A DNA stretch of 64,000 bases from Selaginella moellendorffii (lineage: Eukaryota; Plantae; Lycopodiophyta): NCBI RefSeq assembly GCF_000143415.4, contig NW_003314272.1:1620374-1684373 (forward strand). The letters are read 5' to 3'. The stretch's first letter is position 1, and every line of letters starts with the position of its first letter. Shown here piece by piece: positions 11,695 to 43,500 of the stretch. The notes beneath the pieces are model-generated. The model was not told the origin of the DNA. It searched no databases and worked only from the letters and a program-made list of their open reading frames with translations. The translations under genes were made by a program, and so were the position numbers.

Positions 11695-12200
11695 CCACCT
11701 TGTGGTCGTGGAGATAGCTGAGGCCTAGCACACAACCTAGAGCTATGATATCCAACTTGACAACAAGGAGCTGTGCAGCACCTCCCGGAGAATCACACTC
11801 TCCTCATACTCGTAGCAAATATATACTTGCAAAAGCACGCATCCAGAGTGGAAGCTGGTGAAGCTCGATGAAGTTCCCCACGAAGCTCCCTTTCTTCCAG
11901 ACGATCCCCACCGATCTTGCTAGCCTCTGCAAGTTGTCCGTGGCATGAATGCATATGGGCCTGTCTTGGGACTCCCTGGACAACTCCCTCAACGGGGTGG
12001 TGAAAGCCTCCTTCCCCTGAATCGAAATGTCTGCCCAAAGCTCCAGCTCCAAATCCATTGACTTTTGTGCACAAGCACGTCAAGAGCACCAACATTATCG
12101 TCACCAACGATCTGCTGGCCAAGATCGCCGCCCCCTAGCTGGTCCGAGAGATCCCGACGCCTCTCCCCACGATCAAGGAGAACGAGGAACAGATTTTAGT
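11695..12200. pseudogene. Rearranged pseudogene of the kinase at 42121-43500 (5' part on -, 3' part on +)
   Basis: Minus 11695-12060: ATDN..KKGSFVGNFIEL..YEYEESV..LSYLHDH. Plus 12063-12200: FVHKHVKSTNIIVTNDLLAKI..LVREIPTPLPTIKE. Both match the 42121-43500 protein. Confidence 0.85.
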
Positions 12201-14215: not shown

Positions 14216-14225
14216 ATGCCCTAGA

Positions 14226-14235
14226 AAAACCCTAA
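14226..14235. promoter_or_regulatory. Telo-box (AAACCCTA) immediately upstream of KRI1
   Basis: aaaaccctaa ~10 bp from the ATG; telo-boxes are typical of ribosome-biogenesis genes. Confidence 0.5.
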
Positions 14236-14247
14236 ATTCCCATTTGG

Positions 14248-16880: not shown

Positions 16881-18692
16881 ATGGCGATGGTGAGCGGCGG
16901 CGTCGCGTCCCGGGCGCTCCTCCGCGTGCTGGGCAGGCGGCGCTGCCTCCACATTTCGGCGCTCGCATTGTCCACACCGCGCGGCACCGACAGAGGATTC
17001 GTTCTCTCTCGCGGTGAGTTCACAGCATTGGCGCCCGCGGCAAGGCGATCGGGATGGACGGGTCTGTCCATTCCAGGTTCGCGTCTCTATTCCAGGTTGA
17101 TCTCCCCGCTCGTGAAGCCGCAAGAGTATGATGTGGATGCCTGGAGCGACACTCCTTATCTCGAGTACATTGTGGGATTGGAGCCGGAGGGATCCACTCC
17201 GGCCACTTCCACTGGCGGATCGACGCTGGCGGGAGTCAGGGGTGACAAGAGGCCGCATCCCGGCTACGCAGCGCGGCTCATCCGGCTCAGGATCGAGAAT
17301 GGTGCCGCTGTCAAGGCGAGAGAGGCCATCCTCGACGAGAAGAGCTACATGAGAGACTTTGGAAGGTTTTGGATTCCAATGGTGGCCGATCTCATGGGAG
17401 GACCGCATCACCACCACAGTCTGGAGGTAAGTGACTGCTTTGTTCTTAGATCTTCGCTCCTTGTTCTGATAAGCTTGTCTTAGATCTTCACTTGGATGAA
17501 AGACCATCCTACTGTTCTAAAATCCGCGAGGGTCATGGAGCTCGACCGGCTCTACTCGATGATGATCTCCTACGCCGGCGTGGTCGGGCACACAATGCTG
17601 GCTCGGAGCTGGTTTGACGACATGTTCGAGAAGGGAATGAGGAAATCCAGCCAGTGCTGTAACGCGCTCATCATCGCCTACGCCAAGGACAACGACCTCG
17701 ACAGCGCCATGCAAATCCTCCACGGCATGAAGCAGTTCTCCCGCGAGTGCTCGCCAAACGCCATGACGTACCACATCCTCATCGCCATGTTTGCGCGCTA
17801 CCACCACTGGCAAGGCCTCGAGGCCATGGTGAGGGAGTGCCGGGATGCCGGGCTCTCGCCCGACGCCATAACTTTCAACACGCTCTTGCACGCCTACGCG
17901 AAAATGGGACGCATGGACAGGTTCGAGAGCACGTTCCAGGAGATGGAGCGGGTTTGCAGGAAAGGTGACGAGCCTTTCAAGCGAAGCCCGGAGACCTTCG
18001 CCGCGCTGCTCATCGGCTATTCTCGCCTGGACGCGCTGGGCAGGTTCCACCAGGTTCTCAGCGAGATGCGAGAGGAAAGCTCCCAGCTGCCGCAGAACAT
18101 CGCGGTTCCGGCGGTGGAGGAGGCCGCCAAGGCTCACAGCAGGACTGCGACCGTGGAAGGGATAGAGAAGCTGATCGAGTTTGTGGAGACAACTCCAGAG
18201 ATCGCATCGACGTCGGCGTTCCAGAGCTATGTCGTTGAGTCGTATGCGCAATGCGGCCGGCTCGAGGAGATCGAGAACTACTTGGGAGGAGTGATCGACC
18301 GCAAGGATGGCAGCTTTGTGGAGGACCCAGCGTTTGAGTCCATGGTGGGAGCTTTTGGCCGGAGAGGCGTGGAACAGCCCGAGAGCAAAGCGGTGGAGAG
18401 GGTGTACACGATCTACGCGAAGTGTAGAGAGGCGGGTATGGAGCTAAGTTTGCATTGCTACGAGAGTGTCGTGTCGGAGATGGCCAGGGCAGGGAGTTAC
18501 GAGAGGATGGAGGAGGTGGCCGCGGACATGGAGGCGGCAGGGGCAAAATGGCCGGCCAAAACGCTACGAGCTCTTCTGGATGCGTACCAGAGATCTGGGA
18601 ATGGCGCAAAGGTGGCGGAGATGTCCGAGAGGCTGAAAGATGTATCGCAAGAAGCGGAGATGCCAGACACCAAGGTTGCGGCTGCTTGCTGA
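16881..18692 (+). CDS. P-class pentatricopeptide repeat protein, probably organelle-targeted; one intron (~17427-17483)
   Basis: Arg/Leu/Ser-rich N-terminus; PPR motifs CCNALIIAYAK, PNAMTYHILIAMFAR, PDAITFNTLLHAYAKMG; gtaagt..cttag intron joins the two ORFs; tandem telo-box at 16848-16865. Confidence 0.85.
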
Positions 18693-19699: not shown

Positions 19700-22600
19700 T
19701 TTTCACTGCCACTGCTGTTATGGTTTGTGGGATTAATGCATTTAAGGGTGAGCAACACATAAATAAGAGTGGGATATAATCTTGATGATAGTGATGAAAG
19801 CCAAAAAGGACATCCACAGCAGTGCAGCTAGTATTCTTTTTTATCTAAGTGTTACACATAAGTTTTTGAGCTCCAAGGTGGTGAAGAAATTTAGTTTGCG
19901 GTTATGGTAGATGGATGTAGGACTTGTGTTTATGGTGAATGGACTGTGAGTGTTCCTTTGATGGTTTAAGAAATTTTCAATTCTAAATTATAAATCTTGG
20001 TTATATAAATGTTATTCTTGGGAAGGAATGGTTTTATGATAAAAAGCTAAAGATCAATTAAGAGCATAATATTTTATATATCAAAATTAATGGCATTGTG
20101 AAAGAGATTGTTAACAGTGTTAGAATAGACAATAGTGATACTCCATTAATCAATACTTTGCAATTTGTGTCATACATGCATGAGATAATTGTATTTTTTT
20201 TTTTTAATATGATCATATCTAATTTGGAGTACATTTGTGGGCATAGGGCTTGTGTGAACTACATTCAAGAGGAGTTTCGTGATGTACTTCTAGATGAGTT
20301 GTTTTGCCTTTCAAACATGGAATTTAACATGAGATTGACTTAGTTCTTAGAGCTACTAATAATTGACTTATACTAGTCTTACTGAAGATGAAGAGATTAA
20401 TAGATCACTTGTTAAATACCTTTAGAAGGGGTGGTCATGGATAAGTAAATCTTTTTAGGTTGCTCTTGTAGTGATGGTCCAGAAGAAAGATGGTATATGG
20501 CATCACTACATGAATTATAAGGAATTAAATGATAAGACAATACAAAATATATTCTTAATCCCTTATATTGGTGATTTGCTCAATAGTCTTCGTGATGCTT
20601 GATATTTTACAAAGATTAATTTGAGGCAAAGGTATCATCAAATTTGTGTTAAGCCAAAAGATGTCCTGAAGACTACATTTTGGATGAGAATAAGGATGCC
20701 ATTTGGTTTAATGAATGCTCTTATAAGTTTTTAAAGATTGATGAATCAAGTTCTAGAGGAAAGTTTATAATTTATTATTTTGATGATATCTTGGTGTTCA
20801 ACTCTTCAATGGAGGAACATGAGATGCATGTGTAAAATGTTTTACAACTTTTAAGGGATAACAAGCTCTACTTGAAGTTATCTAAGTGTTAGTTTTTTTT
20901 AGAAGAGATTTGATATCTTAGGCATTTGATTTTAGTATATGGTATGGAAGTTGATCCTACAAAGATCCAAATCATGGTTAATTAGCCTATACCTTCAATT
21001 GTGCATAATCTTTGTAGTTTCTTTAGTATAGCTAGAGTTTTTTGACAATTTATGAAGGACTTTTCACAAATAACTACTCCCTTGACTAATCTTCTTCAAA
21101 ACACATCAAAGCATACTACTATCATAGTTAGGATGAAAAGTGCCAAATGGCATTTCAATGTTTGAAGCAATATTATATCTTTGTTTCTGTATTGAAGATT
21201 TTTGATTTGAAAAGCCTCTTGTGGTCAAAATAGATGTAATTAATATTGCTAATAGGCCCATATTGCTTTAAGTTGAGCATCCTCTTGTATACATGAGGCA
21301 GAAGTTTGATGTTATACAACAGAATTGGCCTACTCAAGATATGTATAATGTGATTGCTAATATAAAGGAAAGGCAATATTATCTATATGGATCAAATTTC
21401 CATGTGAATTCAGATCATTAATCTCTCCAATATTTCAGTCTTCAAAAGGATCTTCGAGGCCACCATGCTTGTTGGTAAGAGTTCATGTAAGAAATGTCCG
21501 TTAAGATCTAATACAAACATAGAGGTGACAATAAAATAGTTAATGCATTATCTAGGATGGTAAATTCTATTTCATTGTGAAGCTATCCAATGATCTCTTA
21601 GATAAGCTTAAGGAGTTTTTTGACTTTGACTCCTTTATCACTGATATTCGTATGAAGGTTTTGTTGAGGGATGCTTCTACAAACTTGAAAGGTGACAAAT
21701 TTGTGTTATTCAAGATACAAGATAGAATCCTAGTGAAGAAGGGACATGTAATGGTTTTTCGTGTTGACAAACTATTTTGGTTAAGTGTCATGATATGCCA
21801 AGTGTTGGGCATTCAAAAGTACTGAAAAACATATATATTGGTGAAAAGGTATTTCTTTTAGCTTAGGATGAAGTTTGATTGTTTAATTTACTATGTGGTC
21901 AAAGTTGATCATCAGAAGTTCATTAGCCTTTATCATCCTCTATATATACCCAAGAATAAATAGGATAATGTCTTAATGAATTTTATCACTAGTTTACCTA
22001 AGACTTTTCAAGGAAATGATGTTATTTGGGTTGTTGTGGATCATTTGACAAATATAACTCACTTCTTTTTAGTGAACACAACAATTAAAACTTTTAAAAT
22101 TGTTTAGTTATTTGTAGATCAATTATTCAATTTCTATGGTTTGTCGAGTGTGATTGTAATCCCAAGTTCACATCTAAGTTTTGGCAAATGGTCTTTAAGA
22201 AGCTAGAGATTAAGTTGAGCATGAGTAGTGGTGAACATCCAAATCTTTTTTTTTAGTGTTTTTTAGGTACATAAACTTATGTTTATGTGAGAGCAAAACA
22301 ATGTAATCCAAACTTTTTGATTGAGAAAAGTAGTGAAAGGTTGTGATTCATCATTCACAGGGGATTAGTTGTTGGAAGATATGTTAAAGTCTTTTGTGGG
22401 AAACATGACTCGACAAGGAGTATGGGAGAAGTACTTATTTTTACTTCAGTATGCTCACAATAATGTTTGTTAATCGGCTAATGGTATATCTCCATTCATG
22501 GCAATGTATTGTTATAAGCCTAGGTCTCTTGAGTTTGGCTTTGGTTCGGGTGCTTCATGCTTATGATTTTTTGGAGGATATGCAAAATAAACTTGAGTTG

Positions 22601-23600
22601 GCAAAGTTAAACATGAAACAAATTCAAGATTGAGACAAAAGATTGGCTAATGAGTATTATAGTCATCAAAGTATAAAGTTAGTGACAAGGTTTTCTTTAA
22701 GCTATTGAATGCACAACAATCTCTGAAAGGAGGTGGCAATTCTAAATTATCTTTATAGTATTGTGGGCCTTGGACAATTTTACAACATGTGGGGGATTCT
22801 GCTTACCTTTAAAACTTGCTATTAATTCAAAGATTCATCCAATGTTTTATATAAGTAAACTTAAAACATGTTTACACTCTAGTGGTATTGTGGATTAGTC
22901 CATCATCCAAATCCCAAAGATTAATGTTGAGAAGGCTAATTTGGCCAATATTCTTACTCAAAGATTGGTGAAAACACACTAAAAGACAACTCAAGAGTTA
23001 TTAGTTCAATGGAATAATTATTCTATAGACAAAGTTACATAGGAAATTGAGAATAATATAAAGAGAATGTTTCGTTTAGTTATAACTTAAATAACATTCT
23101 TAAGGAAGGGGAGAATTAAGTTTTATAACCATATTGTTATATGATTTGAGTTGTTTGTTCTATTCTCATTCTATTAATAATATTATTTTCCAAAAAAGCT
23201 ATATTGTTTTCTTTCTTTCGTGGCTATTTATTATGACATTAGTGTTGTCATTTGCACATTTTTTCTCATGGCCATATTGTCTTGGACTCCCTTCATGTGA
23301 GGCTTATTTAGCTTTTTAAGACTAGCATCCCTGGTTAATTCATGGGGAGGGAAGAATAACATGAACCATAAAATATTTTATAACTTGTGGGATTTAATTT
23401 TTAATGGCCTAAAGTTCACTCCTTGTTCATTTTAATTTGTCAGAAAAGTAAGTTCACAACCATAATATTCAACTAAGTCTTCTCTAAGAATCTAATAGTA
23501 CAATTTCAAATTCTATCAAGCTTCAATTGCTTCTTGGTGTTAAGATTTATGGGCCATCTTTGGGAGGCTGTGTATCTAACACTATCCTCTAAACCATAAT
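19700..23600 (+). mobile_element. Heavily decayed Ty3/gypsy (chromovirus-like) LTR retrotransposon
   Basis: Protease remnant (ILGKEW), RT (VQKKDG..YKELN, MPFGLMNA, FDDILVF), integrase (MNFITSLPKT..IWVVVDHLT), GPW motif (YCGPWTI), chromodomain-like LVQWNNY, polypurine tract aaggaaggggagaa at ~23102-23115; many stops, CpG-depleted. Confidence 0.85.
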
Positions 23601-23782
23601 GAAGTTGGCCATAGAAACTTAGTCACATTCTGCCAAAGCAGTCCAAGGCCCATTGGCCCCATTTGGAGGTACCGAGAGATCCAAACGCTAATATTTCAAG
23701 CTCTCGCAAAAAGCATTGCTAGATCGACCCCCTTATATACTCAAACCATGGCACTTTGCCACGTGTCGTGCCACCACGAATT

Positions 23783-24103
23783 TTATTTACTGGGAGCTGA
23801 ACTCTCGGCCAAATCTCCACTTAGCGATTGCAGCCTGGCAATGGCAGCCTGTATTTGATCCTCCCAGAATTTGGGACCCTGGCTCTCACTTCCCTCCGTG
23901 GCACTGCTCCACGGTCTCTTGGCCAGATTCGCGTCCTTGCAGCTCAACCGCTCTATGATCTTTTGAATCTTGTCCTGGATCCTGGCAAGTGCTGCCAATT
24001 GTGCTTCTTTCTCCTTGTTGAGACATCTGTCGCTGCGATCTACTACTTCTACCCCTTGCTCCATCTGAAAGACAGTAGATCTAGAGGCTATCTCCAATTC
24101 CAA
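23783..24103 (-). other. Hypothetical short coiled-coil ORF
   Basis: 106-codon protein-like helical ORF (EKEAQLAALARIQDKIQKIIERL) with non-ATG start; may be the last exon of an unrecognised gene. Confidence 0.25.
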
Positions 24104-24579: not shown

Positions 24580-27219
24580 TCAAAACTCTCCACCTTCGGT
24601 AGCATACATGATCCCTGCATACATGTTAGCCAGCAGCACGTACTTAGCTGCAGCGTTCCGGTCGTTAAGCTCCGCGGCATGCCGCGCGGCAATGGCGCCT
24701 CGGCATACGTCACCGTGTTTACCGCACGCCCCCAGCAGCGTCATCCAGCCCACCAGCCCCGGCTGATATGGCATGCAGCCCAGCAAGCTCTCGGCCTCGT
24801 CGAGCTGCCCCAGCCGACCAAGCATGTCGACGATGCAAACGTAGTGCACGGCGCTGCAAGGTACTCCAAAGTCATCGCTCATGGACACAAAGATCCGCCA
24901 CCCTTGGTGCTTCAATCCGGCGTGGCTGCATCCCGAGAGTATCCCTGCCAAGCTCGCCTCGTCCGCGTTGAATCCTTGGAGCTCCATCTCCGAGAAGAGC
25001 TCCATGCTCGCGCTCCAAGATCGTGACCCGCCCAGCGCCGCCACAGCCCCAGCCATGGCGTTCCAGCTCGCGAGGCTCTTACGCTGGATGCCGCGGAATG
25101 CCACGCGGGCCTCCTCTAAGCTCCCGCAGCTCGCGTACATGGCCACCAGCGCGTTGCCGATGCACGAGCTCTCGCCCAAGAGCTCGCCCGGGATGGCATC
25201 ACGGTGGAGCGCTCTCCCCACCGCTATCTCGCCCAGCGCGCCACACGCGTTCAGCAGGAGCACGAATGTGATCTTGTCCGGCGTCACGCCGCCAGTGCCG
25301 CGCGTCGCATTGACTAGTTTGACCGTACCGCCCCTGCCGTTGACTGTACCGCCGTGGTTCAAGAGCTCGAGCGCGTCTCTCGGGCGACCGTTTTGGACGT
25401 AGACCGCGAGCATGGCGTTCCACGGCACGATGGTTTTGTCGGCAATGCGCTCGAATGACGATCGCGCAGCGTTGCAATCACCGCACTTGCCAAACATGTC
25501 GATCAGCGCGGTGCCCACGAACACTTCCGACTCCAAGCCGCGCGACACGACCGCGGAGTGAACCTCCCGCCCGGCGTCCAAGTCGGAGCTCCCTGCGCAG
25601 GCCTCGAGCACGCTCACAAACGTCGTCGCAGCCGGCTCGATCTCCATCTCGCGAAACAGCGCGAACGCTTCCTCGCGGCGGCCGCTCTGGGCGTAGGCCT
25701 GGATCATCGCAGTCCACGCCACCGTGCTCCTCGAGCGCATCGCGTCAAAGACTCCCCTCGCCTCGTCCGGCCGCCGGCGCTTGCCGTACAAGTCCACCAT
25801 CGCATTCCCGAGCACGCCATCGATTCCTAGCCCGGATCCCAGCGCGCGCTCCTCGAGCGATCTCGCCGCCGCGAGCGCGGCAAGCTCGTCCCTGGAAGAA
25901 GAACTGGATGCCAGCGCGTGCACGACGCTCACGAACGTCTGCTCGCTCGGCCTCACGCCTTCCAAGTCCATGGCGTGGAAAAGCTCCATCGCCTCGTCGC
26001 TGCGATCGCTCTGCGCGTAGGCCGCGATCATCGTCGTCCAGGATACGACGTTCTTCCTCTCGATGCTTGCGAAGATCTTCCTCGCGGCGTCTGGCATGGC
26101 ACACCTCCCATGCATCGTCACCAGGGCGCTGCTCACGACCTCGTCCTGCTCGAATCCGTGCTCCAAAACGCTTGCATGGAGCTCCCGCCCGAGCTTCCAG
26201 TCCGAGCACACCTTGAGGAGCTCGAGGTACGTGACGCAGTCGGGCTCCACGCCGTGGTTTCGTCGCATTTCCCGGTACAAATCCATAGCCGTGCTCGAGC
26301 TCGAGCTCCGGGCTTGCGCTGCGATCAGTTGGTTCCAGCAAAAAACGTTTTTTGCGTCGTGCCGGATCAAGTATCTCCGCGCATCGTCCAGGCTCCCGAG
26401 CTTGCAAAACATGCCAACGATCGCCAGTGCCACGGCTCTCACGGATCCAAAACCGCCATCCACGGCTCTTGTCTCGATCTCCCTTGCTTCTTCCAGATTC
26501 TCGCAGGCCTCGGCGATGGAAGCCAGAGTATACTCGTTTGGAGTCACGTCCATAGCCTTGTAGAGCTTCACGGCCTCTCGGTTTTGGCCACTTAGAGCAT
26601 ACGCTCGGATCATACTTGTCCAGGACACTACGTTCTTCTCACGTAGGCTGTCGAATATCTCGCGAGCTTCTCCCGGACGCTTGCATCGGCCATACATACC
26701 GATGAGCGCCGTCCCCACGACGAGATGAGCTCCAAATCCACAGGCATCCACGCGAGCACGTACATAAACCGCTAGATCGATCGAACCAAGCTCTGAGACC
26801 GACGATATGACGCTCACAAACGTTACTTCGCTCGGCTTGACTCCTTCCAGATCCATCTCTCGAAACAAATGCAATGCCTTCTTGCCATGCCCGGTCTGGG
26901 CATTTGCCGCAATGATAATGTTCCACGAGAAAACGTTCCTGTCGCCCATGCTTCTAAACACCGCATCTGCGTTACCCACGTCCTGGCACTTTCCATACAT
27001 CTCCATGAGAAGATTTGCCAGGAATCTATCAGATCCCATCCCCGATCCAGTAATCTGCCTGTGTAGGGACTTACCCCTGGAGAGATCCCTGCTGCGAGCG
27101 CATTCTCGCAAAGACCTCGCCAGCCTGCCACCATCTTGTGTGTTGGATTCGTGAAAATCACCCGCGGAAAGATGGAGATAGCAAGACGACCTTGGCCTTC
27201 TAGCAGAACGACCAAGCAT
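24580..27219 (-). CDS. PLS-class PPR protein with E domain (RNA editing factor type), intronless
   Basis: 879-aa ORF with repeated NVVSWT/N..MI.AYA motifs, HYVCIVDMLGRLGQL and E-domain WMTLLGAC..YVLLANMY; no DYW. Confidence 0.92.
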   Translation of the reverse strand: MLGRSARRPRSSCYLHLSAGDFHESNTQDGGRLARSLRECARSRDLSRGKSLHRQITGSGMGSDRFLANLLMEMYGKCQDVGNADAVFRSMGDRNVFSWNIIIAANAQTGHGKKALHLFREMDLEGVKPSEVTFVSVISSVSELGSIDLAVYVRARVDACGFGAHLVVGTALIGMYGRCKRPGEAREIFDSLREKNVVSWTSMIRAYALSGQNREAVKLYKAMDVTPNEYTLASIAEACENLEEAREIETRAVDGGFGSVRAVALAIVGMFCKLGSLDDARRYLIRHDAKNVFCWNQLIAAQARSSSSSTAMDLYREMRRNHGVEPDCVTYLELLKVCSDWKLGRELHASVLEHGFEQDEVVSSALVTMHGRCAMPDAARKIFASIERKNVVSWTTMIAAYAQSDRSDEAMELFHAMDLEGVRPSEQTFVSVVHALASSSSSRDELAALAAARSLEERALGSGLGIDGVLGNAMVDLYGKRRRPDEARGVFDAMRSRSTVAWTAMIQAYAQSGRREEAFALFREMEIEPAATTFVSVLEACAGSSDLDAGREVHSAVVSRGLESEVFVGTALIDMFGKCGDCNAARSSFERIADKTIVPWNAMLAVYVQNGRPRDALELLNHGGTVNGRGGTVKLVNATRGTGGVTPDKITFVLLLNACGALGEIAVGRALHRDAIPGELLGESSCIGNALVAMYASCGSLEEARVAFRGIQRKSLASWNAMAGAVAALGGSRSWSASMELFSEMELQGFNADEASLAGILSGCSHAGLKHQGWRIFVSMSDDFGVPCSAVHYVCIVDMLGRLGQLDEAESLLGCMPYQPGLVGWMTLLGACGKHGDVCRGAIAARHAAELNDRNAAAKYVLLANMYAGIMYATEGGEF

Positions 27220-29045
27220 CCACTGTTAAGTCGGGCAGCCGAGGTTGGGGCCGATATGCCTAGCCGGGCACCCGAGATAGTAGCGGAGACCGAGCTCGAC
27301 ATAATTCACATTTGCTGCCACACTGCCAGCCAAAGCTTCTGGATCAAACTAAGTACCATCGTTTTTTGGATTGATGGTGGCTCGTTCTAGAAACTTTTTA
27401 TGCGCAGCTAGCTGTGTGTCGCTACAACATCCAACCCGATTGGGCAGCAGCCCCTCGTGGAGTTGCCGGACAACTGCCAGGATCTTCTTCGCAGCATCAG
27501 GTCTTGAAGGAAAAATATAAAATCTGAGAGATAGGGACTTCGCCATCGTCGGAGAGCAACTTTTGAGAGCTTGCTACAACGTGGGCGATCGAGGTTTTCT
27601 GCTTTCTTTAAAATAATAATAACTTATTATTACTGCTACTATTATTATTATTGTTATTGTCAGCATATAGAAAAGACTCATTCATTTCCAAGCGGCTGTA
27701 AGGCCATTGACAAGAAAAGAGAAAGATGCTCTTGGCAGTGGCTCCATTTGGCTGTGTCTGGATGGATCGGCCGCCTCGAGATGTGTAGAACAACACACCC
27801 ATTATTATTACAGACTTGCAGCCAAAAGCTTGGAGCAAACCAAGAAATTTTCCCTCCAAGGACAAGAAAAGTGGGGGATCCGTCTTGAGCATGCTTTGTT
27901 TGTGGGTGTGCCTCGATTTTACTCACTACCAAAAGCAAAGATGCTAGCAACGGTGGATTTGTGAGCGATTCATGGGAGCATTTGTCATGAGAGATGGGCG
28001 ATAGATCTTTCAAAGGCTTCTCGCTTGCTTGTTCTTCACATCAAAGAAGAGAGAAACTTGACGCTAGCTAACTCAATCTTTCCCATCTTTCCCCCACCGA
28101 CTTGGCAACCCATGGGGTCCAAAACAATTTGGTGCATTGATTTAGCGGTGGAGGTGCTGCCACCCGCACAGTGCATCCCTGGCAGTGATCAAGGACGTGT
28201 TTCCTCGTCGATCCACATAAAGAAAACGAAATACATTTTCCAGGCATGAGAAACCAAAATATATATATACTGTATTTCTTTCTTTCTTTAAATTTTTTGG
28301 AATGGTGTTATAATCGGGCAACAAACATGCGTACCACGACGGTGCGCCCCAAAAACACGCAACACGAAAGCAATCACACCGCAAAACAAGACAAATTTTC
28401 TTGCCTTTTTTGACCCCCCCAAACTCTCTTTAATTGCAGGAAAACAAAAGAAAAGCACGCATTTTCCAAAAAAGAAACTTAATAAGAACACCTGCAGCTA
28501 CCCAACGAATTTATTTCAGTTTTTGCCTAGCGAGGAGCTACGTCGCCAGATTGAATGAAGCAGACTGTGACCACACCACCCCTCCAGAGAAATTGGATAA
28601 ACAGCCCAAAGTGATCCCATATAGTGACATGACTCTCCAATGCTCTTCTTCCTCTAAGTTGCGATGGAAGTGACAGATCCAGAGATCAAACAAAAAGGAA
28701 AAGAAAAAGATGTATCACGTACGTACACGGTGGTGGGTTATACTGTCACTATACCCAGAGTACTACACACACATGGCTACATGCCACTTTGAATGGAAGT
28801 GACCACGAGCAATGGAGTTAACAGTCCCTGTTAGACTTCTATTTTTAACAGGACCCGTGCCTTTAAGCTTGTCATCCATCTCTCTCTTGACACACACAAC
28901 ATTCTTCTTATATCCTCTTTATAACCATTTTCTCACTTGAAGCGTTGCTTTGCGCGTTTGACTCAGTGTACTTTGGACGTCAGATTAAAAAGCCTCGCTT
29001 CATGTGTGTGTACGCTCTCGCCTCCTTGATGAGGAGATTGGGGAG

Positions 29046-29053
29046 TATAAATA
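29046..29053 (+). promoter_or_regulatory. TATA box of CLE gene
   Basis: TATAAATA ~160 bp upstream of the ATG, followed by a pyrimidine-rich leader. Confidence 0.55.
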
Positions 29054-29205
29054 CTGCCGTCCCCAAACAATTTCTTCCAAGCGTTTTTACTTTCTCTCTT
29101 GTTCTGCTTCGTCCTCGTTTTCGGCCGAGAATTCATCTCCAACGTTTTGTTTGCTTGCTCTTGTCGTTGCTGGTTTCATTTCCCCCGAAAGTTGTCAGCG
29201 AAAGT

Positions 29206-29517
29206 ATGGCCGAGAGAAGCTCGAAGAATGCCGTGGTTTTCCTCTTGTTGGCCATGGCTTTGTCCTGTTACTTTGTCTTCCCGGTCTCGGCGAGCAGTCG
29301 AAAGCTGGCCCAAGCCATGAAGCAGCAGCACAAGGCGGAGGAGCTCGCGTCTCAAACGCCGCCGGGCTCGGCTACCAGCGTTGCTCCTCTCGATCCTGCT
29401 GCTGCCACCACTCAGTTCGTTGCCCCGGACACGAACTCCAACAAGCTCGATTCCGCCCCGGCCGAGGATGATCTGCATTACGTGAGGAGTGCTCCCAATC
29501 CGATGCACAACAAGTGA
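29206..29517 (+). CDS. CLE-family secreted peptide precursor (103 aa), atypical dodecapeptide HYVRSAPNPMHN
   Basis: Signal peptide MAERSSKNAVVFLLLAMALSCYFVFPVSA, SRKL motif, variable region, C-terminal 12-mer (29476-29511) plus K then stop. Confidence 0.85.
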   Translation: MAERSSKNAVVFLLLAMALSCYFVFPVSASSRKLAQAMKQQHKAEELASQTPPGSATSVAPLDPAAATTQFVAPDTNSNKLDSAPAEDDLHYVRSAPNPMHNK

Positions 29518-32050
29518 CATACCTCTCTCAAGTATCTCGTAGCGTAGCAGCGGATCCGCCCCGGAAGTTCCCAAAGTTCCATCTCCGGGAGTTTGTAGGA
29601 AGACGTTTCCACCTGGTTCAAAAGTCGGGGGCTTTGATCTCGAGTCAAGTCGAGTCGGGTCGAGTCGAGGAGTTTCTTTCCTTCCCGGTGGTGATGGTCG
29701 ATGATGATGATGATGATGATGAAGATGATGTTTCTGGCAAGTAAAAGAAGAATATCAGAGTCTCACGACTTGAAGAGTTTCGTGTCGTTTTCGTTCTAAC
29801 ATGGACTTTTGTTCTTTGTTCTTTGTTTCTCTTTCTTTCCTTGTTTGCGTTTCAGCTGAAGGAAAATCACCGTTGGAAGGTCGTTTGGTCAATCATCGCC
29901 CAACAGCAAGTCGCGGCAGCCACTCAAATCCTTCTGGATCTTGCACTGCTGCCGAATCAATAAATTAGTCCCAGGAGCGAGCAGCAGCCACTCAGATATG
30001 GTCCCCCGGCTCGTACGACGCAATGGAAACTTTTATCTCTCCTGTTCGCTGTCACTCCTGTTCCATCATCATCAGCTGCAGCAGCAGGAGCATGGCATCC
30101 AGAGTTAAGAGAGGAAAACAAAAATAAAAGAAGGAAAAATCTGCTTGCCTTCCAACTTTAACTTCTCCACCCGAAAGCCGTCCTGGGAGAGAGTGGAGCG
30201 TCGAGACGAGAGATGACGAAGACCGGAAGATATTTTCCCGGCAGCAGCGAAGGAGCTCGCGTGTTTGGAGCTTGGATCCACTGCGGAGGGGATGGGCGAT
30301 GATTGCCAGCATCACGGACAGATTGTAGGACTGTCGTGAGACGAGAGAGATCTTGACCTTCCTTTGGATTGGATTGCAAGCAACAATGGCCTCCAAACTC
30401 ATTCATGTGTCCATGTTTCTCGCTTCCACGAGTGTCCTGTCAAAGGCTTGTCTGCGTGTGTCCCATATCGATATGTCTCGTTGCTCTCAAACGCTCCAGC
30501 GAGTTTCGGGACGGGAGGAGAGTTGTAGTCCATATGTTTGCGATGAGTACTCGTGCACCAATCTATGGAGAGCTCCAAAAACTCAATCGTACTCTTCCAC
30601 TCCTGGAAATGCGTGCTTGCAGGAACAAAGAAAAACGGGAGTAAGGCAAAAACGTAAAAACGGGAAAGCAAAGTTCGGATCGAAAGGATAAGGGAGAGAG
30701 CAAGCTGTAGTTTCATCCTCATTCACACTCGCGAAACGACGTCCTACAGACACAGCGACGTAATGGCGTCAATGACACAGTGATTGACGCAAGGACAACA
30801 AGCACAAAAGAACACCGTGTTCTTTTCCGTGCACCAAAGCTAGGAAAAATATCACATACCAAGCAGAAATCGCAGTGAGCGACCGCGAGTGAGTTTCTTG
30901 CCTTCTTTTCCATCTCTGGCACGAATGCATCCTACCAGCAAGGCAAATCCAGCCGAAGATGGACTGAACACGAAGAGGGAGGAAACTTAACACACAGGCG
31001 AGACGAGCTATGCCAAAAGGAAAAGTGCTCCAACAAAAAGATCTCGCTGGGCACAGAATAAAGCTGCGATGATGATCCATCTAGGCTATACAGCGCTGGA
31101 CATGGCTGCTTGATTCAAGACACGGCAAAGACACACACATACACAGAGCTCTTCTTCGTTTCCGACACGAAACAAGCAAGCTCATAAAGAAAGGAATGGG
31201 ATTTGCAGGGCAGTCAGGGACCAACTTTTACCTGTGCGAGAGCGCCGGAGGAGCTGGCGATGTGGACATTGCGAGATCTCTCGGCGGATCGCCAATGACG
31301 CGCTCCCCCCATTTTTTAACTTTGAGTTTCTAAAAATTAGGGCTCTTGAGGGCAGGTATCGCTCTAGCTTCCTCTCTTAGTGGTTCTTTCGTTCTCACGC
31401 TTTTGTGGTTGATTTCGGGAAAAGAATGTAGTTTCTTCGATGGTATTGCCAGTTCTTGCACATTTATTTTGTGAGTTCTATCATTAAAAATGTGTAGTTT
31501 TATATATCTTTGCAGAGTTAGTGGATCTGGCAGCACTCGTTTTCATTTCGTTGCCGTCTCGTATAGTCGGTACCGACGTCCACTGTTCGTATTCCTTTTT
31601 TTAGTTCTCTCTTTAACTCACGCTGTGCTAGGAAGATCTTATTTCGCAACAGCTTCTGGACGAGGTTGGCAGTACTGTGGTAGTGGAAACGCATTGTATA
31701 TGCGAGACAGCTTCTTCTTTTATTTCTCTGCTCCTACATGCTTGAAGGTATAGTTTCTCTGGAGCAGGAAAACAAAGCTATCTGGCTGCCCCGAAAGAAG
31801 GTTCGCGTTCTATTCTCTTGCAAACTATGAAAGTTTTTTCGCGTGTTTGTGTTTGTTTCACGCATATACTCATTTTCGCTGCAATTTCTGAACTCATTCT
31901 TGACATAACATTGACTTTTGCTCGATCATTCCTTCGTTTGTAGATCCCTCTTTTTCACTTTCTTCCTGTCCTTTTCTTATTACATTGAATAGTTTTGTAC
32001 AAGTATTATCAATCGTGTTCGAGTTGAGCAATAGACATCTTATAAAGTGT

Positions 32051-32645: not shown

Positions 32646-33207
32646 CGCGGGAAATTTTAAGCACTTTCTTTTAAACAAAAACTGGTGTTTTTTTTGTTTT
32701 TTTGCAGAGTTATATGCTTTAGTCCTTCCCTCTGATGCCGCAATCCAGGTATCGATTTACTCTCCATCTTTTCTTCACCTTTGTGGTGCTTGTGTGATTT
32801 TGAGGAAAGAAAAATTATTTTTCTTTTGATCGATTTGCATTCATCTCTATCTCTCTATGTCGTCTAGTCATTCTCGGTTTAGTTAACTGTTTGTGATGAT
32901 TTATGATACTCTTTCAGATAGCAACTGCTGTAAATAAAAAGTCTGGCGATCATGGAGTCATTTTTGCTCTGCGGTTTGCCATTTGTGAGCTCATTCTTGC
33001 AACTCAACATTGAAGTTTGTTAAATCCTTCATTTGATTTGGAGCATTGTGCAGCGATCATTGTCTACTTCCTTGCTCAACTTCACTTTCTTTCTTTACTC
33101 CTCAGTTTTGTACAATCTGGACTGTTAAAGGATTGGACATCTTACCACGATCTTGTCTTACGCGGACATGTAAAGTGTCCACACTTTGATATTTCACAAC
33201 TATTGAG

Positions 33208-35549
33208 ATGTCCCAGAGCTCTTTCAACGCGCTCTGCGAGGTATGGCGATGTTCTTTGCTCGGTTTTGATTCTCAATCAACTGTTTACAGGGTTTGCTCG
33301 CCCCTGAGGACGAGGAGCAGCACCAAACGCACATCGTGGAGGGATGCCCCGGATGCAAATGCTCGCATTTGCAACGCTCGGGAGCTCCTTTTCCCAGAGG
33401 AATGATGCTCGTTGTCCTAACCATGTCGATGCTGAATGGTAACTTACTTGAGAGACTACACTTGAGATCACCAAAACAGTTCCATTCTTTGCCGTGCAGC
33501 GCTACCGATCCAGATCCTCTATCCATTCCTTTATTTTATGGTACGGCATACAACGTTGATACTGCTTCACCTATAGTCCTTTGTTTTCGCTTTCAACAGG
33601 TTGAAGATTTCCATGTCGACAAGAGGAAGATTGGCACATTCGCCGGCCTCATTGGTAATGCAGTGATTTCTTCCTTCTTTCTTTGTTATTCATTAAGCTA
33701 AGCAGCCAGTGGATATATGGTTGGAAGAACTGCTACCGGTTTTGCGTGGGGATATATGGCCGATCACCACGGAAGAAAACCGGTCATCTTTTGCGGGATG
33801 CTCTCCTTGTAAGGCTTCATTCGTGGTTACATGTTTTTTCTTATTCTCGTCATTACCTGCAGGATTGTGTTCAATGCTTTGTTCGGTGTGAGTACCTCTG
33901 TCTGGATGGCATTCATAACGCGCTTTCTGCTTGGAGCGGGCAATGGTCTGTTTGCCATTTTGGCGGTAAGTAGAATATAAAGTTTCTGCGTTTAGCGAAC
34001 GTTTCCCAGGTTTATGCGACGGAGATTTCTAGTATTGAGCATCGGCCTTTTGGACTGTCGACTGTAAGCTTTAGATTCTCTGGGTTCCGAGATCGGCATA
34101 ACGTTTTTCTTGATTTCTAGAATACTATAGTTTGGGGACTGGGACTGATCATTGGTCCAAGCATTGGAGGCTTTTTATCAAAGGTTTCATCACTTGGAGA
34201 TCTATATCTTACTCCTCTTGTTTACTTGCTTTTCTCTGTTTCCAGCCTGCAGAGAAGTATCCTGGTCTTTTTGAGAACACGTTCTTTGACAGGTAGGCGG
34301 AATGTTCTGACGAAGAAGTGTTCTGTACAAAAACGCTTGAACAGATATCCGTATTTGCTTCCACCGCTAGCATTGTCGTTATTCACATTTTTTTTGATGT
34401 TTTCCCTCCTCCAACTTCCGGTGAGTCCTGAATTTCGAGTAGATTATCTGATCGCGAGTGCTCTCACCAGGAAACTCGGCATAACCATATCATTGCATCT
34501 CCCAACAAAAGCGAGAAGAGTAACTCGATATTTAGAAACTATTCTTTCTGGATATCCAACGTCGTCTACTGCTTGTGGGCTTTTCACGAGATTGCATACA
34601 ATGAGGTAAAACTTTGGTTTCGATTTCTCCTTTATGTTTCTTCGTTATCATTTTTTTGGTCAAATTTGCAGACTTTTCCACTTTGGGCTGTAAGTCCTGG
34701 TGGACTCAGATGGTCAAGCCAAACTGTTGGTTTGGTTCTCGCATTTACAGGTGACGAACTCGAGAGTTTACTTCAAGCTGTGACATTGTTTTCTCTTTTA
34801 TTTTTTCCATCTCAGGTGTTTGCCTGGTGTTTAATATGCTGTTTATTTTTCCCATGCTCATAAACCGTTATGGTCCAATTTTGGTAGCGCGGACAGGCAC
34901 TGTAAGTATATTTCGTTTACCATTCCAGGATCTTCCTTGTTTTTCAGGTTCTAAGCCTAATAGTGTTACTGCCATATCCATTTCTCCCAAAGCTTCAAGG
35001 TGTTGCTTGCTACGTTACCGTGATTATCGTTATAGTTATTAAAACCGGCTTATCGGTACGACTTGTTTCACCATTTACTTTTCTAGATTTCTCTTCTCTT
35101 CGATATTGCAGGCAGTAACAATCACTGCGTTGTTTATTCTCGTCAACAACTCAGTGGTATGTATTTGGATGTGAGCCCGAAACGATGATATTTTCCATTC
35201 CAGGAAATATCGCAGCTAGGAACTGCAAATGGCATTTCAACCAGCCTCGTTTCTCTCTCTCGAGCTTTAGGCCCTTCAATTGGAGGCTTCATGTAAGTCC
35301 CTCAGGTTTCGTTCTCAGCGTATGTGCGTTTGGTTCTCGTGTAGATTCTCGTGTGCCCAGGCCCGACCAGACACCACATTTCTTCCTGGTAAACAATGCG
35401 AATGCTTGCTCGCAAGTTTACGCTCCCTCTCTACAGGTAATCAGCTACTATTTTCTTTCCTTGGCGGCTTTGCGATCGTCGTTTTTCTTGGAACTTGGGA
35501 GCCAATTCTTCCTAGCTCTACCAATAAACCAAAATTCCACCATGTATAG
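33208..35549 (+). CDS. Zinc-induced facilitator-like MFS transporter, multi-exon
   Basis: EGCPGC, LPIQILYPFLYFM|VEDFH, WGYMADHHGRKPVI, RFLLGAGNG, WGLGLIIGPSIGG, PAEKYP, FLPGNQLLF: ZIF1/ZIFL family signatures. Confidence 0.88.
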
Positions 35550-42120: not shown

Positions 42121-43500
42121 CTATCTTCCTTCCATTGTTTGACTCTGGAGCTCCCGAAACGCCAGGAATTCCCTCTCCCATTCCTGGGACTTGATCAAAT
42201 AGTTGGACAGCTTCGCGGTAACGTTCTTCATGGGAGGCCGCGACTCCGGGTTGGAGTCGATGCAAAGCCTGGCGAGAGCAGCGACGCTCATCGCCGTGTC
42301 CACCGGATACGAGTCCCGGAGCCTGGCGTCGATCCACAGGCGGAGCTTCTTCCGGGGATCACGCTCCTCCATGATCTCCGTCACCTCGTCCGTGAGGGAA
42401 ACCACCTTGAGCTTCTTGGTCGCGGGATCCAGCTGAACGCCCGGTTGCTTGCCGGTGAGGAGCTCCAGCAGCACCACCCCAAACGCAAACACGTCCATCT
42501 TGCTGCTCACCACCCCGCTCGTCTGGTACTCGGGGGACATGTAGCCGGGAGTGCCTGTGATCTTGATGCTGTTCTTCCGGACGAGCTTCCGCCTCGGTAG
42601 CCTCTCGTGGTCCTCTAAGTTGATCTCAGCGTCCTCCTTGATCGTGGCGCTCGCAGGGAGAGGCGACGGGATCTCTCCAACCAACTGTGGGATGCCAAAC
42701 TTGACGATCTTCGCTCGGAGCTCGTTGGTGACGATAATGTTGGTGCTCTTGACGTGCTTGTGCACGAAAGGCGGCATGGTGTGGTCGTGGAGGTACTCGA
42801 GGCCCAGCGCCACGTCCAGCGCGACCTGGAGCCGCGACGTCCAGCTCGCCAGCGCGGAGAAGCCCTCGGCCCTGGGGCTGTGCAGCGCCTCCCGGAGATT
42901 CACCCCCTCCTCGTACTCGTAGCAAACGTAGACGTGCTCGCTCTCGCGCAAGCACGCCCCCAGCACCTTCACCAGGTTGACGTGGTGGACGCTGGTGATG
43001 ATCTTGAGGAGCTCGATGTAGTTCCCGACGAAGCTCCCTTTCTTCTGGACGATCGCGACGTCGGCGCCCCGGACGAGAGCGCGGAACACGGAGCCGCCGA
43101 TCTTGCTGGCCTCGCTGAAGTTGTCCGTGGCACGGACCAGGTCCTTGTATCGGTAGCGTATAGGCCCGTCTGGGAGGAGGTCCCTGATCCCGGCGAGAGA
43201 GCTCGCACTGCTGCTGGACGAGACCCTCGAGTCCCTGGATTCCCTGGAATTGTTGGTCTGGGACTCCTTGGACGCGGTGGTGGTGAAAGTGGTGAAGCCG
43301 CCGTCGGTGGTGCTGCCTAGGCTGCTGTCCCGGGCCGCCGACTCCCTCCTCGATGATTTCCTGTCACTGCCTCTCAGCGCTGCTTCTCCTCCTCCTTGGC
43401 TGCCTTTCTTGTCTTTCCTACTGCCCGGCAGGCACATTCTAAACATGAGCTCCTCAAACCTGTGCCACTGCTCCTCGCCCGCGCGCCGCGGGATCAACAT
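42121..43500 (-). CDS. Cytoplasmic LysM-RLK-related (pseudo)kinase, intronless
   Basis: Kinase fold (SVHHVNLVKVLGAC, LEYLHDH, GTPGYMSPE, DVFAFGVVLLELLTG) but HKHVKS replaces HRD, KFG replaces DFG and there is no Gly-loop; no TM or LysM. The true start may be a downstream Met. Confidence 0.88.
   Translation of the reverse strand: MLIPRRAGEEQWHRFEELMFRMCLPGSRKDKKGSQGGGEAALRGSDRKSSRRESAARDSSLGSTTDGGFTTFTTTASKESQTNNSRESRDSRVSSSSSASSLAGIRDLLPDGPIRYRYKDLVRATDNFSEASKIGGSVFRALVRGADVAIVQKKGSFVGNYIELLKIITSVHHVNLVKVLGACLRESEHVYVCYEYEEGVNLREALHSPRAEGFSALASWTSRLQVALDVALGLEYLHDHTMPPFVHKHVKSTNIIVTNELRAKIVKFGIPQLVGEIPSPLPASATIKEDAEINLEDHERLPRRKLVRKNSIKITGTPGYMSPEYQTSGVVSSKMDVFAFGVVLLELLTGKQPGVQLDPATKKLKVVSLTDEVTEIMEERDPRKKLRLWIDARLRDSYPVDTAMSVAALARLCIDSNPESRPPMKNVTAKLSNYLIKSQEWEREFLAFRELQSQTMEGR

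What the first reader, a model, noticed from the sequence alone, without database searches (positions are those of the whole stretch)
29206..29517. Hybrid, possibly antagonistic CLE peptide HYVRSAPNPMHN
Seen: a small single-exon ORF with TATA box, signal peptide and a terminal CLE-like 12-mer. Established: CLE ligands split into R-type (e.g. RLVPSGPNPLHN, CLV1/BAM receptors) and H-type TDIF (HEVPSGPNPISN, PXY/TDR). This motif has TDIF-like His1 but an R-type His11-Asn12 end. It also replaces the conserved Pro4 with Arg and Gly6 with Ala; Gly6 substitutions in CLV3 are known to weaken activity or give antagonistic behaviour. Inference: it could be a natural dual-specificity ligand, an endogenous antagonist, or the ligand of a lycophyte-specific receptor. 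Caveat: CLE catalogues exist for lycophytes, so it may already be listed.
Basis: partly seen in the sequence, partly recalled or inferred. Interest (0 to 1): 0.75.

Follow-up and report, generated by a model that had tools for sequence, protein, structure and literature searches.

The report
Catalogued divergent spikemoss CLE hormone gene
This is a real, apparently transcribed gene of the spikemoss Selaginella moellendorffii for a small secreted CLE-family peptide-hormone precursor with an unusual peptide (HYVRSAPNPMHN); a published catalogue already lists it, the deposited gene models are wrong at the 3' end, and nothing yet shows the peptide is an antagonist or a dual ligand.

Summary
Window 29206-29517 (+) is an intact 103-codon ORF. 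It has a TATA box 160 nt upstream, a classic signal peptide, and HYVRSAPNPMHN followed by one Lys and a stop.

The genome is Selaginella moellendorffii. The gene is deposited as SELMODRAFT_409888 (this haplotype) and SELMODRAFT_431015 (the other). Zhang et al. 2020 (PMC7552357, Table S1) already list it as CLE candidate Sm409888, TDIF-like Group 4, with exactly this 12-mer. So it is not new.

New here:
- The deposited 169/167-aa models skip the stop through a 29-nt "intron". Contigs from four public runs (probably RNA) run straight through it, so the product is the 103-aa protein with the CLE motif at its C-terminus.
- The two haplotypes are identical across the whole ORF, while the flanks differ about every 80 bp.
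- Codon usage favours this frame.
- No orthologue was detectable.

The antagonist or dual-ligand idea is untested. A synthetic TDIF with His11 is bifunctional (Hirakawa 2017), which supports it. But Gly6-to-Ala usually just weakens CLE peptides. Arg4 (CLE45) and Ala6 also occur in other catalogued CLE motifs (CLE45 is a known ligand), and IDA peptides naturally have Ser-Ala-Pro.

Other CLE genes of this genome were noted earlier in this scan; this locus was not.

The parts
29046..29053 (+). TATA box (TATAAATA), 160 nt upstream of the ATG
   Evidence: Read. Unchanged between haplotypes. Function as a promoter is inferred.
29119..29205 (+). 5' UTR as far as contigs show it; the true start is probably near 29080
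   Evidence: Contigs of runs X2 and X3 begin at 29119, one base after a haplotype SNP at 29118, where k-mer contigs break. There is no upstream ATG.
29206..29517 (+). Coding sequence of the 103-aa CLE prepropeptide, stop included
   Evidence: Codon log-odds is +0.24 per codon against negative values for the other five frames. There are no differences between haplotypes.
29206..29292 (+). Signal peptide, residues 1-29 (predicted cut Val-Ser-Ala / Ser)
   Evidence: Hydropathy. SignalP and TargetP values in Zhang et al. Table S1. The cut site is inferred from the -3/-1 rule.
29293..29475 (+). Variable propeptide region, residues 30-90 (Ala/Pro/Thr-rich)
   Evidence: Its only library match is to a low-complexity protein.
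29476..29511 (+). CLE motif HYVRSAPNPMHN, residues 91-102
   Evidence: Listed with the same limits by Zhang et al. 2020.
29512..29517 (+). Lys103 and the TGA stop; the single basic tail residue is probably trimmed
   Evidence: Trimming by a SOL1-type carboxypeptidase is inferred from Arabidopsis (cited in PMC4659896).
29514..29542 (+). 29-nt GT..AG 'intron' of the deposited models that removes the stop codon; not spliced in the contigs
   Evidence: The model was reproduced. Colinear contigs of X1, X2, X3 and X13 span it without a joint.
29518..29980 (+). 3' UTR with (TCGAG)n at 29640-29669, (GAT)n at 29700-29730 and AATAAA at 29959-29964; the 3' end is approximate
   Evidence: Contigs reach 29863 (X13) and 30043 (X2). 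Repeats are and the polyA signal. Haplotypes differ here by four substitutions or indels within the part the deposited models call coding.
29741..29855 (+). Second 'intron' of the deposited 169-aa model; also colinear in the contigs
   Evidence: model; X13 contig 29187-29863 without a gap.

Best explanation
The locus is a real, expressed, single-exon gene of Selaginella moellendorffii that encodes a 103-aa prepropeptide of the CLE peptide-hormone family. It is already catalogued as Sm409888 / SELMODRAFT_409888.

Proposed mechanism (all steps inferred from what is established for CLE peptides; none shown here):
1. The signal peptide, residues 1-29, sends the protein into the secretory pathway.
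2. A subtilase cuts in front of His91.
3. A SOL1-type carboxypeptidase removes the single C-terminal Lys. This frees the carboxylate of Asn12, which subfamily-XI LRR receptor kinases hold with their Arg-x-Arg motif.
4. Pro7 is hydroxylated.
5. The 12-mer HYVRSAPNPMHN acts as a ligand, most likely an agonist, possibly weak, of a TDR/PXY-type or CLV1/BAM-type receptor of the plant.

Which receptor it uses, and whether it activates or blocks, is open.

I put about 0.9 on 'expressed CLE-family precursor with the 103-aa product' and about 0.5 on 'active agonist'.
For: - ORF, signal peptide and C-terminal motif.
- The motif is far beyond chance in the window.
- Species and deposited entries EFJ29898.1 and EFJ06075.1.
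- Listed as a Group 4 CLE candidate with the same 12-mer.
- Language-model features place it among CLE_plant clusters: scores 0.94, 0.93 and 0.92, and 23 of 30 hits.
- 18 public runs from six named studies hold the stretch.
- In four runs laid on 3 kb, contigs lie colinear over 29119-29863 with no joint. In three of those runs they cover almost nothing else, as expected of a transcript. Both alleles are present.
- There are no haplotype differences across 29202-29666. The local rate is 1.23 events per 100 bp, so 3.8 are expected in the ORF (Poisson P about 0.02).
- Coding-type codon usage is found only in this frame.
- A one-residue tail is typical of CLE precursors.
- Its catalogue motif score of 24.8 is in the range of other listed H-type motifs, such as MpCLE1 at 24.0 and SmCLE14 at 27.1.
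Against: - Pfam gave no hit even at E = 10.
- No orthologue was found by the word search or by HMMER over 1.84 billion representatives, so motif conservation across species is untested.
- Positions 4 and 6 depart from the consensus, and G6A abolishes activity in TDIF and other CLEs.
- The runs are only guessed to be RNA. Contigs show neither strand nor transcript ends and drop rare isoforms.
- There is no evidence for the mature peptide or for any receptor.
Confidence: 0.62

Rival explanations
1. Natural antagonist or dual-specificity ligand. The peptide binds TDR/PXY-type and/or CLV1/BAM-type receptors. Because of Ala6 and Arg4 it either blocks them or, because of His11-Asn12 in an H-type frame, addresses both.
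For: - Synthetic CLE41-His11 is bifunctional and binds TDR and CLV1.
- CLV3 with Gly6 changed to Ala gave a weak clv3-like phenotype in plants.
- The Hyp4 side chain is solvent-exposed and not read by TDR, so Arg4 need not block binding.
Against: - G6A abrogates TDIF and other CLE activities.
- In a re-test, Ala6/Thr6 versions were mostly weaker agonists or inactive, not antagonists.
- The kink pocket recognises Gly6-Hyp7 by shape.
- Nothing here bears on binding.
- HLVPAGPNPLHN of the same genome is a cleaner candidate for natural bifunctionality.
Confidence: 0.1
2. Expressed but signalling-dead paralogue. It is a young duplicate of an H-type CLE gene that lost Pro4 and Gly6 and is drifting.
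For: - Two positions deviate, and one of them (Gly6) is functionally critical.
- No orthologue was detected.
- The evidence for constraint is only two haplotypes.
Against: - The ORF, signal peptide, Asn8-Pro9, His11-Asn12 and the near-terminal stop are all intact.
- The ORF shows no haplotype differences while the flanks vary.
- It is held by runs of six studies.
- Ala6 after Ser5 works well in IDA, and Ala6 or Arg4 occur in other listed CLE motifs.
Confidence: 0.22
3. The deposited 167/169-aa 'transmembrane protein' models are right. The stop is spliced out and the CLE-like motif is internal.
For: GT..AG borders exist, and the joined exons reproduce the deposited protein P0003 exactly.
Against: - A 29-nt intron is shorter than known plant introns (own knowledge).
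- Contigs of four runs cross both proposed introns colinearly, and no joint was seen.
- The read-through part carries a 6-bp microsatellite indel and three substitutions between haplotypes.
- Its codon score is near zero, at 0.06.
Confidence: 0.03
4. It is functionally an IDA-like ligand of a HAESA-like receptor. Its Ser-Ala-Pro core and His-Asn end match IDA (PIPPSAPSKRHN).
For: - Ser5, Ala6, Pro7, His11 and Asn12 are shared with IDA.
- S. moellendorffii has three HSL-clade receptors.
- Other precursors of this genome mix CLE-like and IDA-like motifs.
Against: - Positions 8-10 are Asn-Pro-Met as in CLE, not Ser-Lys-Arg.
- The Arg before His-Asn that HAESA reads is missing (own knowledge).
- Only 5 of 12 residues match IDA, against 8 of 12 for the H-type CLE pattern.
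Confidence: 0.03

Closest known systems
TDIF / H-type CLE peptides (AtCLE41/44 HEVPSGPNPISN; SmCLE14 HSVPSGPNPVGN; MpCLE1 HKNPAGPNPIGN)
   Same: - His1, Val3, Ser5, Pro7-Asn8-Pro9 and Asn12.
- Small secreted precursor with the motif near the C-terminus.
- Placed in the same Group 4 by Zhang et al..
- By eye, its signal peptide and the Leu-His junction resemble SmCLE14. This was not tested statistically.
   Different: - His11 instead of Ser or Gly.
- Arg4 instead of Pro.
- Ala6 instead of the kink-forming Gly.
- Tyr2 and Met10.
Synthetic bifunctional CLE41-His11 and KIN peptides (Hirakawa et al. 2017, PMC5303819)
   Same: An H-type frame ending His11-Asn12. In CLE41 this combination gives both CLV3-type and TDIF-type activity and binding to TDR and CLV1.
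   Different: The synthetic peptides keep Pro4 and Gly6. This one is natural, lacks both, and is untested.
HLVPAGPNPLHN of the multi-motif precursors Sm416983/Sm420331 in the same genome
   Same: His1 with His11-Asn12, so the 'hybrid' ends are not unique to this gene in this species.
   Different: That motif keeps Pro4 and Gly6 and sits in a long multi-motif precursor. This gene has one motif and a different precursor.
AtCLE45 (RRVRRGSDPIHN) and catalogued Ala6 CLE motifs (RKIPSAPDPLHN, KKVPSAPNPKGN)
   Same: Val3-Arg4 and His-Asn in CLE45, and Ser-Ala-Pro in the two others. Each deviation occurs elsewhere in the catalogue of CLE motifs.
   Different: No listed motif combines Arg4 with Ala6. 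RSAPNP occurs only in Sm409888 in the stored part of the 69-species table.
IDA (PIPPSAPSKRHN)
   Same: Ser-Ala-Pro core and His-Asn C-terminus. Ala at position 6 is compatible with full activity there.
   Different: Positions 1-4 and 8-10 are CLE-like, and it lacks the Lys/Arg-Arg before His-Asn.

Membership tests
CLE peptide precursors | N-terminal secretory signal peptide | tested here: met
   Charged n-region, 17-residue hydrophobic core and Val-Ser-Ala cut motif. Published SignalP 0.533 and TargetP 0.954. No signal-peptide predictor was available here.
CLE peptide precursors | Small protein (about 50-150 aa) with one 12-residue motif at or near the C-terminus and a tail of 0-2 residues | tested here: met
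   103 aa, motif at residues 91-102, tail of one Lys. This holds only with the unspliced model supported. In the deposited models the motif is internal.
CLE peptide precursors | Conserved motif residues R/H1, V/I/L3, P4, G6, P7, N/D8, P9, H11 (or S/G in the H-type), N/H12 | tested here: inconclusive
   Seven of the nine are met. Pro4 (Arg) and Gly6 (Ala) are not. Both substitutions occur in other listed CLE motifs.
CLE peptide precursors | Match to a curated family model | tested here: not met
   No Pfam-A hit at E up to 10. I did not check whether the CLE_plant model PF27922 named by the Atlas is in this Pfam copy. Atlas features place the protein among CLE_plant clusters; that is a lead, not an alignment.
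CLE peptide precursors | Processed, hydroxyprolinated 12-13-mer perceived by a subfamily-XI LRR receptor kinase | not testable with these tools
   Needs peptidomics and binding or bioassays.
TDIF / H-type CLE subfamily | His1, Val3, Gly6-Hyp7 kink, Asn8-Pro9, Ser or Gly at 11, Asn12 | tested here: not met
   His1, Val3, Pro7, Asn8, Pro9 and Asn12 are present. Gly6 is Ala and residue 11 is His (criteria). It can be called H-type by residue 1 and by the Group 4 placement, but not a TDIF orthologue.
R-type (CLV3-like) CLE subfamily | Arg1 with His11 and His/Asn12 | tested here: not met
   Residue 1 is His; His11-Asn12 are present. Hirakawa 2017 shows that residue 1 does not decide specificity.
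IDA/IDL peptides | PIP motif: Pro-Pro-Ser-Ala/Gly-Pro-Ser-Lys/x-Arg-His-Asn | tested here: not met
   Only Ser5, Ala6, Pro7, His11 and Asn12 match. Positions 8-10 are Asn-Pro-Met (IDA sequence).

The most novel reading that the evidence does not exclude
HYVRSAPNPMHN is a natural counterpart of the synthetic bifunctional CLE41-His11 peptide, or a natural competitive antagonist. It would be one secreted lycophyte peptide that engages both TDR/PXY-type and CLV1/BAM-type receptors, or that damps them through its Ala6 kink change. Hirakawa et al. 2017 state that such bifunctional peptides have not been found in nature.
Probability: 0.1. Interest if true: 0.7.

Novelty: already known. Interest (0 to 1): 0.3.

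Why it matters
Lycophytes sit at the base of the vascular plants, and exogenous TDIF did not affect xylem in Selaginella kraussiana (PMC4659896). How the H-type and R-type CLE pathways separated is therefore an open question.

A natural peptide that mixes the ends of both types, in a species with only a handful of CLE genes, is a cheap test of the idea that His11 opens cross-talk between TDR and CLV1. The same genome offers a cleaner candidate, HLVPAGPNPLHN.

The practical gain here is modest. The gene model is corrected: the product is 103 aa with the motif at the C-terminus, not a 167/169-aa 'transmembrane protein'. This raises the gene's standing as a true CLE and tells anyone synthesising or expressing it what the product is.

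Tried and rejected
- Pfam scan of the ORF: no family.
- Word-index protein search: only the other haplotype's model.
- Full HMMER search of 1.84 billion representatives: the same model plus a low-complexity 844-aa match to the Ala/Pro/Thr-rich variable region, which is irrelevant.
- Exact look-up of the 103-aa product: not on record. So transcript-derived ORFs of this plant are not in that collection, and the lack of orthologues says little.
- Other CLE motifs in the window: none.
- Exact 12-mer and locus tags in the main text of papers: no hits. The 12-mer was found only in a supplement.
- Mapping to the SmCLE1-15 names of Miwa et al. 2009: the paper is not held and Table S1 of PMC11771683 is not held. 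SmCLE12 is H-type and clusters with AtCLE45/26, so it may be this gene. That is unverified.
- Supplements of Whitewoods 2018 and Furumizu 2021: no such motif, or not held.
- Antisense ORF (29574-29176, called as a 189-aa gene on the other haplotype): rejected, with negative codon score and no domain.
- Bacterial-type promoter and terminator scan: not meaningful for a plant.
- Nearby kinase ORF 42121-43500 as a possible linked receptor: only the kinase domain matched in the 459-aa ORF, which has about 160 unmatched residues before it; upstream exons were not examined. Dropped.
- A Pfam call on 30400-31004 failed because of stop codons.
- I did not type SmCLE14 or other published precursors into tools, so their likeness to this protein was judged by eye only.
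- The deposited spliced models were used only by id (P0001, P0003). In one search the window's exons were joined inside a script solely to check that they reproduce P0003.

Full report
**1. What is in the sequence**

Window 29206-29517 on the + strand is an open frame of 103 codons from the first ATG to a TGA at 29515-29517.

- Residues 1-29 form a signal peptide. Arg4 and Lys7 make the charged start, and a 17-residue hydrophobic core follows (peak hydropathy 2.8). It ends in Val-Ser-Ala, a standard signal-peptidase site.
- Residues 30-90 are an Ala/Pro/Thr-rich stretch with no recognisable domain.
- Residues 91-102 read HYVRSAPNPMHN. One Lys and the stop follow.
- TATAAATA lies at 29046-29053, 160 nt before the ATG. 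No other ATG lies between them, and the start has A at -3 and G at +4.
- AATAAA lies at 29959-29964.

**2. Is it more than chance?**

- A deliberately loose CLE pattern is expected 1.4e-4 times in the six-frame translation of these 64 kb. It occurred in none of 200 shuffles. This is the only hit in the window.
- The scan covers several thousand windows of this genome, so the motif alone could turn up by chance about once in two genomes.
- It also has to end a 90-codon open frame, sit one codon from the stop and follow a signal peptide. Together these push chance far below 0.001 (my estimate from stop-codon frequencies).
- Codon usage, scored against five domain-bearing ORFs of the same window, is coding-like only in this frame: +0.24 bits per codon, where the training genes give 0.21-0.47. 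All five other frames, including the antisense ORF, are negative.

**3. Whose gene it is, and whether it is known**

- The word-index search returned one protein, 100% identical over residues 1-102: SELMODRAFT_431015 of Selaginella moellendorffii, 167 aa.
- Its cluster mate is SELMODRAFT_409888 (EFJ29898.1, UniProt D8RCS8, 169 aa) on a 2.9-Mb scaffold. This matches the window's haplotype.
- SELMODRAFT_431015 (EFJ06075.1) lies on scaffold GL377708.1, the other haplotype of this heterozygous assembly. It is 98.4% identical to the window over 10.6 kb.
- Zhang et al. 2020 (BMC Genomics 21:709, PMC7552357), Table S1, list 'Sm409888' as a predicted CLE candidate. The entry gives Group 4 (the TDIF-like group), motif HYVRSAPNPMHN at residues 91-102, motif score 24.8, SignalP 0.533 and TargetP 0.954.
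- I found no paper that discusses the gene, names the peptide in its main text or tests it.
- Miwa et al. 2009 named SmCLE1-15 but is not held, so I could not assign the SmCLE number. SmCLE12 is H-type and clusters with AtCLE45 and AtCLE26. It is a plausible but unverified match.

**4. The deposited gene models are wrong at the 3' end**

- Both deposited proteins continue past Asn102 for another 65-67 residues.
- The 169-aa protein is reproduced exactly from three pieces: 29206-29513, 29543-29740 and a third exon starting at 29856. That requires a 29-nt GT..AG 'intron' (29514-29542) that removes the stop codon, and a second intron of 115 nt.
- A 29-nt intron is below what plant spliceosomes are known to handle (own knowledge).
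- Public runs decide the matter as far as contigs can.
  - Eighteen runs from six named studies hold the stretch, none with more than 0.76 of the words of 29000-29800.
  - I laid four runs from four studies on 28000-31000. Their contigs were X1 29202-29766, X3 29119-29685, X13 29187-29863, and X2 29267-29666 plus 29749-30043. All are colinear with the genome, with no joint and no gap.
  - In X1, X3 and X13 nothing else in the 3 kb is covered, except one 248-nt piece 0.8 kb downstream in X13.
- That pattern, and run sizes of 3-57 Mb of contigs against a genome of about 200 Mb (genome size from own knowledge), is what a transcriptome gives. The tool still labels 'RNA' as a guess.
- Contig ends sit next to haplotype SNPs (29118, 29178/29201, 29667, 29866), where k-mer assemblies break. 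They do not mark transcript ends. X1 carries both alleles of 29178/29201, so both haplotypes are present in that run.
- Conclusion: the main product is the 103-aa protein, with the CLE motif one residue from the C-terminus. About two thirds of catalogued CLE precursors have this arrangement.
- The exact 103-aa product is not on record in the gene-call collection.

**5. Signs of constraint**

- The two haplotypes differ by 131 events over 10,656 bp, or 1.23 per 100 bp. There is none between 29202 and 29666, which includes the whole ORF.
- For the 312-bp ORF, 3.8 events are expected. Zero has a Poisson probability of about 0.02.
- The flanks vary normally: six substitutions in 28978-29201, then 29667, a 6-bp (GAT)n indel at 29700-29705, 29731, 29736, 29769 and 29782.
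- Four of these fall in the part that the deposited models call coding. That stretch has a codon score near zero (0.06), so it behaves as a UTR.
- This is modest evidence from only two alleles.

**6. Relatives**

- HMMER against 1.84 billion representatives found only the other haplotype's model and a low-complexity match. Pfam found nothing.
- The ESM Atlas feature search put 23 of its 30 nearest clusters in CLE_plant (PF27922), with top scores of 0.94, 0.93 and 0.92. This is an independent but soft pointer to the family.
- The plant's own 103-aa ORF is absent from the collections, so they clearly do not hold its transcriptome ORFs. The lack of orthologues therefore says little.
It could not be run with these tools.

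**7. How unusual the peptide is**

In the same catalogue S. moellendorffii has these motifs:

| Motif | Source |
|---|---|
| HSVPSGPNPVGN | SmCLE14, the TDIF-like gene whose S. kraussiana orthologue peptide is active in Arabidopsis |
| HLVPAGPNPLHN | listed twice, probably two alleles |
| RLVPSGPDPLHH | R-type |
| RYVPGGPDPLHH | R-type |
| RQVPSGADPIHH | R-type |

- His1 combined with His11-Asn12 is therefore not unique to this gene in this species.
- Arg4 occurs in CLE45 (RRVRRGSDPIHN), the commonest CLE motif of monocots.
- Ser-Ala-Pro occurs in RKIPSAPDPLHN (Eutrema) and KKVPSAPNPKGN (cotton).
- The combination of Arg4 with Ala6 occurs only here in the stored part of the 69-species table.
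- The motif score of 24.8 looks low beside R-type scores of 34-38. It is ordinary for H-type peptides: MpCLE1 scores 24.0 and SmCLE14 scores 27.1.

**8. What the literature says about the functional idea**

- TDR recognises TDIF through three contacts (PMC4979064).
  - His1 and Val3 bind at the N-terminus.
  - A shape-complementary pocket holds the Gly6-Hyp7 kink.
  - Arg421 and Arg423 hold Asn12.
- In the same structure the Hyp4 side chain is solvent-exposed and not read. G6A abrogates TDIF and other CLE activities. So Arg4 is probably tolerable, and Ala6 is the real problem for a canonical receptor.
- Hirakawa et al. 2017 (PMC5303819) report the following.
  - Residue 1 (R or H) does not set specificity.
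  - CLE41 with His11 gains CLV3-type activity, keeps TDIF activity and binds both TDR and, weakly, CLV1.
  - Ser11 appears to be kept in euphyllophyte TDIF to avoid such cross-talk.
It applies more cleanly to HLVPAGPNPLHN than to this peptide.
- Czyzewicz et al. 2015 (PMC4526918) re-tested Gly6-to-Ala/Thr 'antagonists'. Mostly they found loss or weakening of activity. They also point out that IDA naturally has a Pro-Ser-Ala-Pro core that is fully active, perhaps because Ser5 stabilises the turn.
- This peptide has Ser5-Ala6-Pro7, so Ala6 need not be disabling in the right receptor. Its positions 8-10 (Asn-Pro-Met) are CLE-like, not IDA-like (Ser-Lys-Arg).

**9. Most likely mechanism**

- Shown: an intact ORF in both haplotypes, coding-type codon usage, and colinear, probably RNA-derived contigs in several studies.
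- Inferred from established CLE biology:
  - secretion, and cleavage before His91;
  - removal of Lys103 by a SOL1-type carboxypeptidase (the enzyme is cited);
  - hydroxylation of Pro7;
  - binding of the free Asn12 carboxylate by the Arg-x-Arg motif of a subfamily-XI LRR receptor kinase. S. moellendorffii has TDR/PXY-clade and HSL-clade receptors, and the BAM/CLV1 clade also includes S. moellendorffii orthologues.
- My odds:

| Reading | Odds |
|---|---|
| Active agonist of one of these receptors | about 0.5 |
| Expressed but inactive drifting paralogue | about 0.2-0.25 |
| Antagonist or dual ligand | about 0.1 |
| IDA-type ligand | about 0.03 |
| Deposited long protein | about 0.03 |
| Chance motif | under 0.03 |

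**10. Verdict**

The gene, the family and the description are right. The functional ideas are untested and only partly favoured by the literature.
- The gene is already known as a catalogued candidate.
- The added value here is the corrected gene model, the expression and allele evidence, and a sharper hypothesis linking it to the synthetic His11 bifunctional peptides.
- Earlier notes of this scan describe other CLE genes of this genome, but not this locus.

Noticed in passing
L001:4758-5377 (-), equivalent to about window 28970-29590 (-): On the other haplotype a 189-aa gene with no Pfam family is called antisense across the CLE gene. The antisense frames in the window have negative codon scores, so this call is probably spurious.
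   Followed up: partly
window 29640-29669 and 29700-29730: (TCGAG)6 and (GAT)10 microsatellites lie in the 3' UTR. The GAT run differs by 6 bp between haplotypes, and the deposited models translate it as a poly-Asp tract.
   Followed up: yes
window 30486-30615 and 30651-30898: Short contigs of runs X2 and X13 lie 0.5-0.9 kb downstream of the CLE gene. One has a 42-nt loose end at 30615, possibly a splice or another small transcript. No convincing ORF lies there.
   Followed up: partly
window 24580-27219 (-) and 17496-18692 (+): Two pentatricopeptide-repeat protein ORFs. The first (879 aa) is the CLE gene's upstream neighbour.
   Followed up: partly
window 51610-53838 (-): A 742-aa ORF with a POX domain ('associated with HOX'), likely the first exon of a BELL-type homeobox gene.
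   Followed up: no
window 12224-14383 (-) and 42121-43500 (-): A KRI1-like ORF (ribosome-biogenesis family) and a 459-aa protein kinase ORF in which only the kinase domain matched Pfam; upstream exons were not examined.
   Followed up: no
window 10001-12000, 20001-24000, 46001-48000: AT-rich blocks (GC 0.22-0.35 against about 0.47 elsewhere), probably repeats or transposon remains.
   Followed up: no
window 32716-33215: Local peak of haplotype divergence, with 22 events in 500 bp against a mean of about 6. It lies inside or next to the MFS sugar-transporter gene downstream.
   Followed up: no
Zhang et al. 2020 Table S1, Sm416983/Sm420331 (not in this window): Multi-motif precursors of the same genome end in HLVPAGPNPLHN and HSVPEGPDPVGN. 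The first is a natural His1/His11-Asn12 peptide with Pro4 and Gly6 intact, so it is a cleaner candidate for natural bifunctionality.
   Followed up: no
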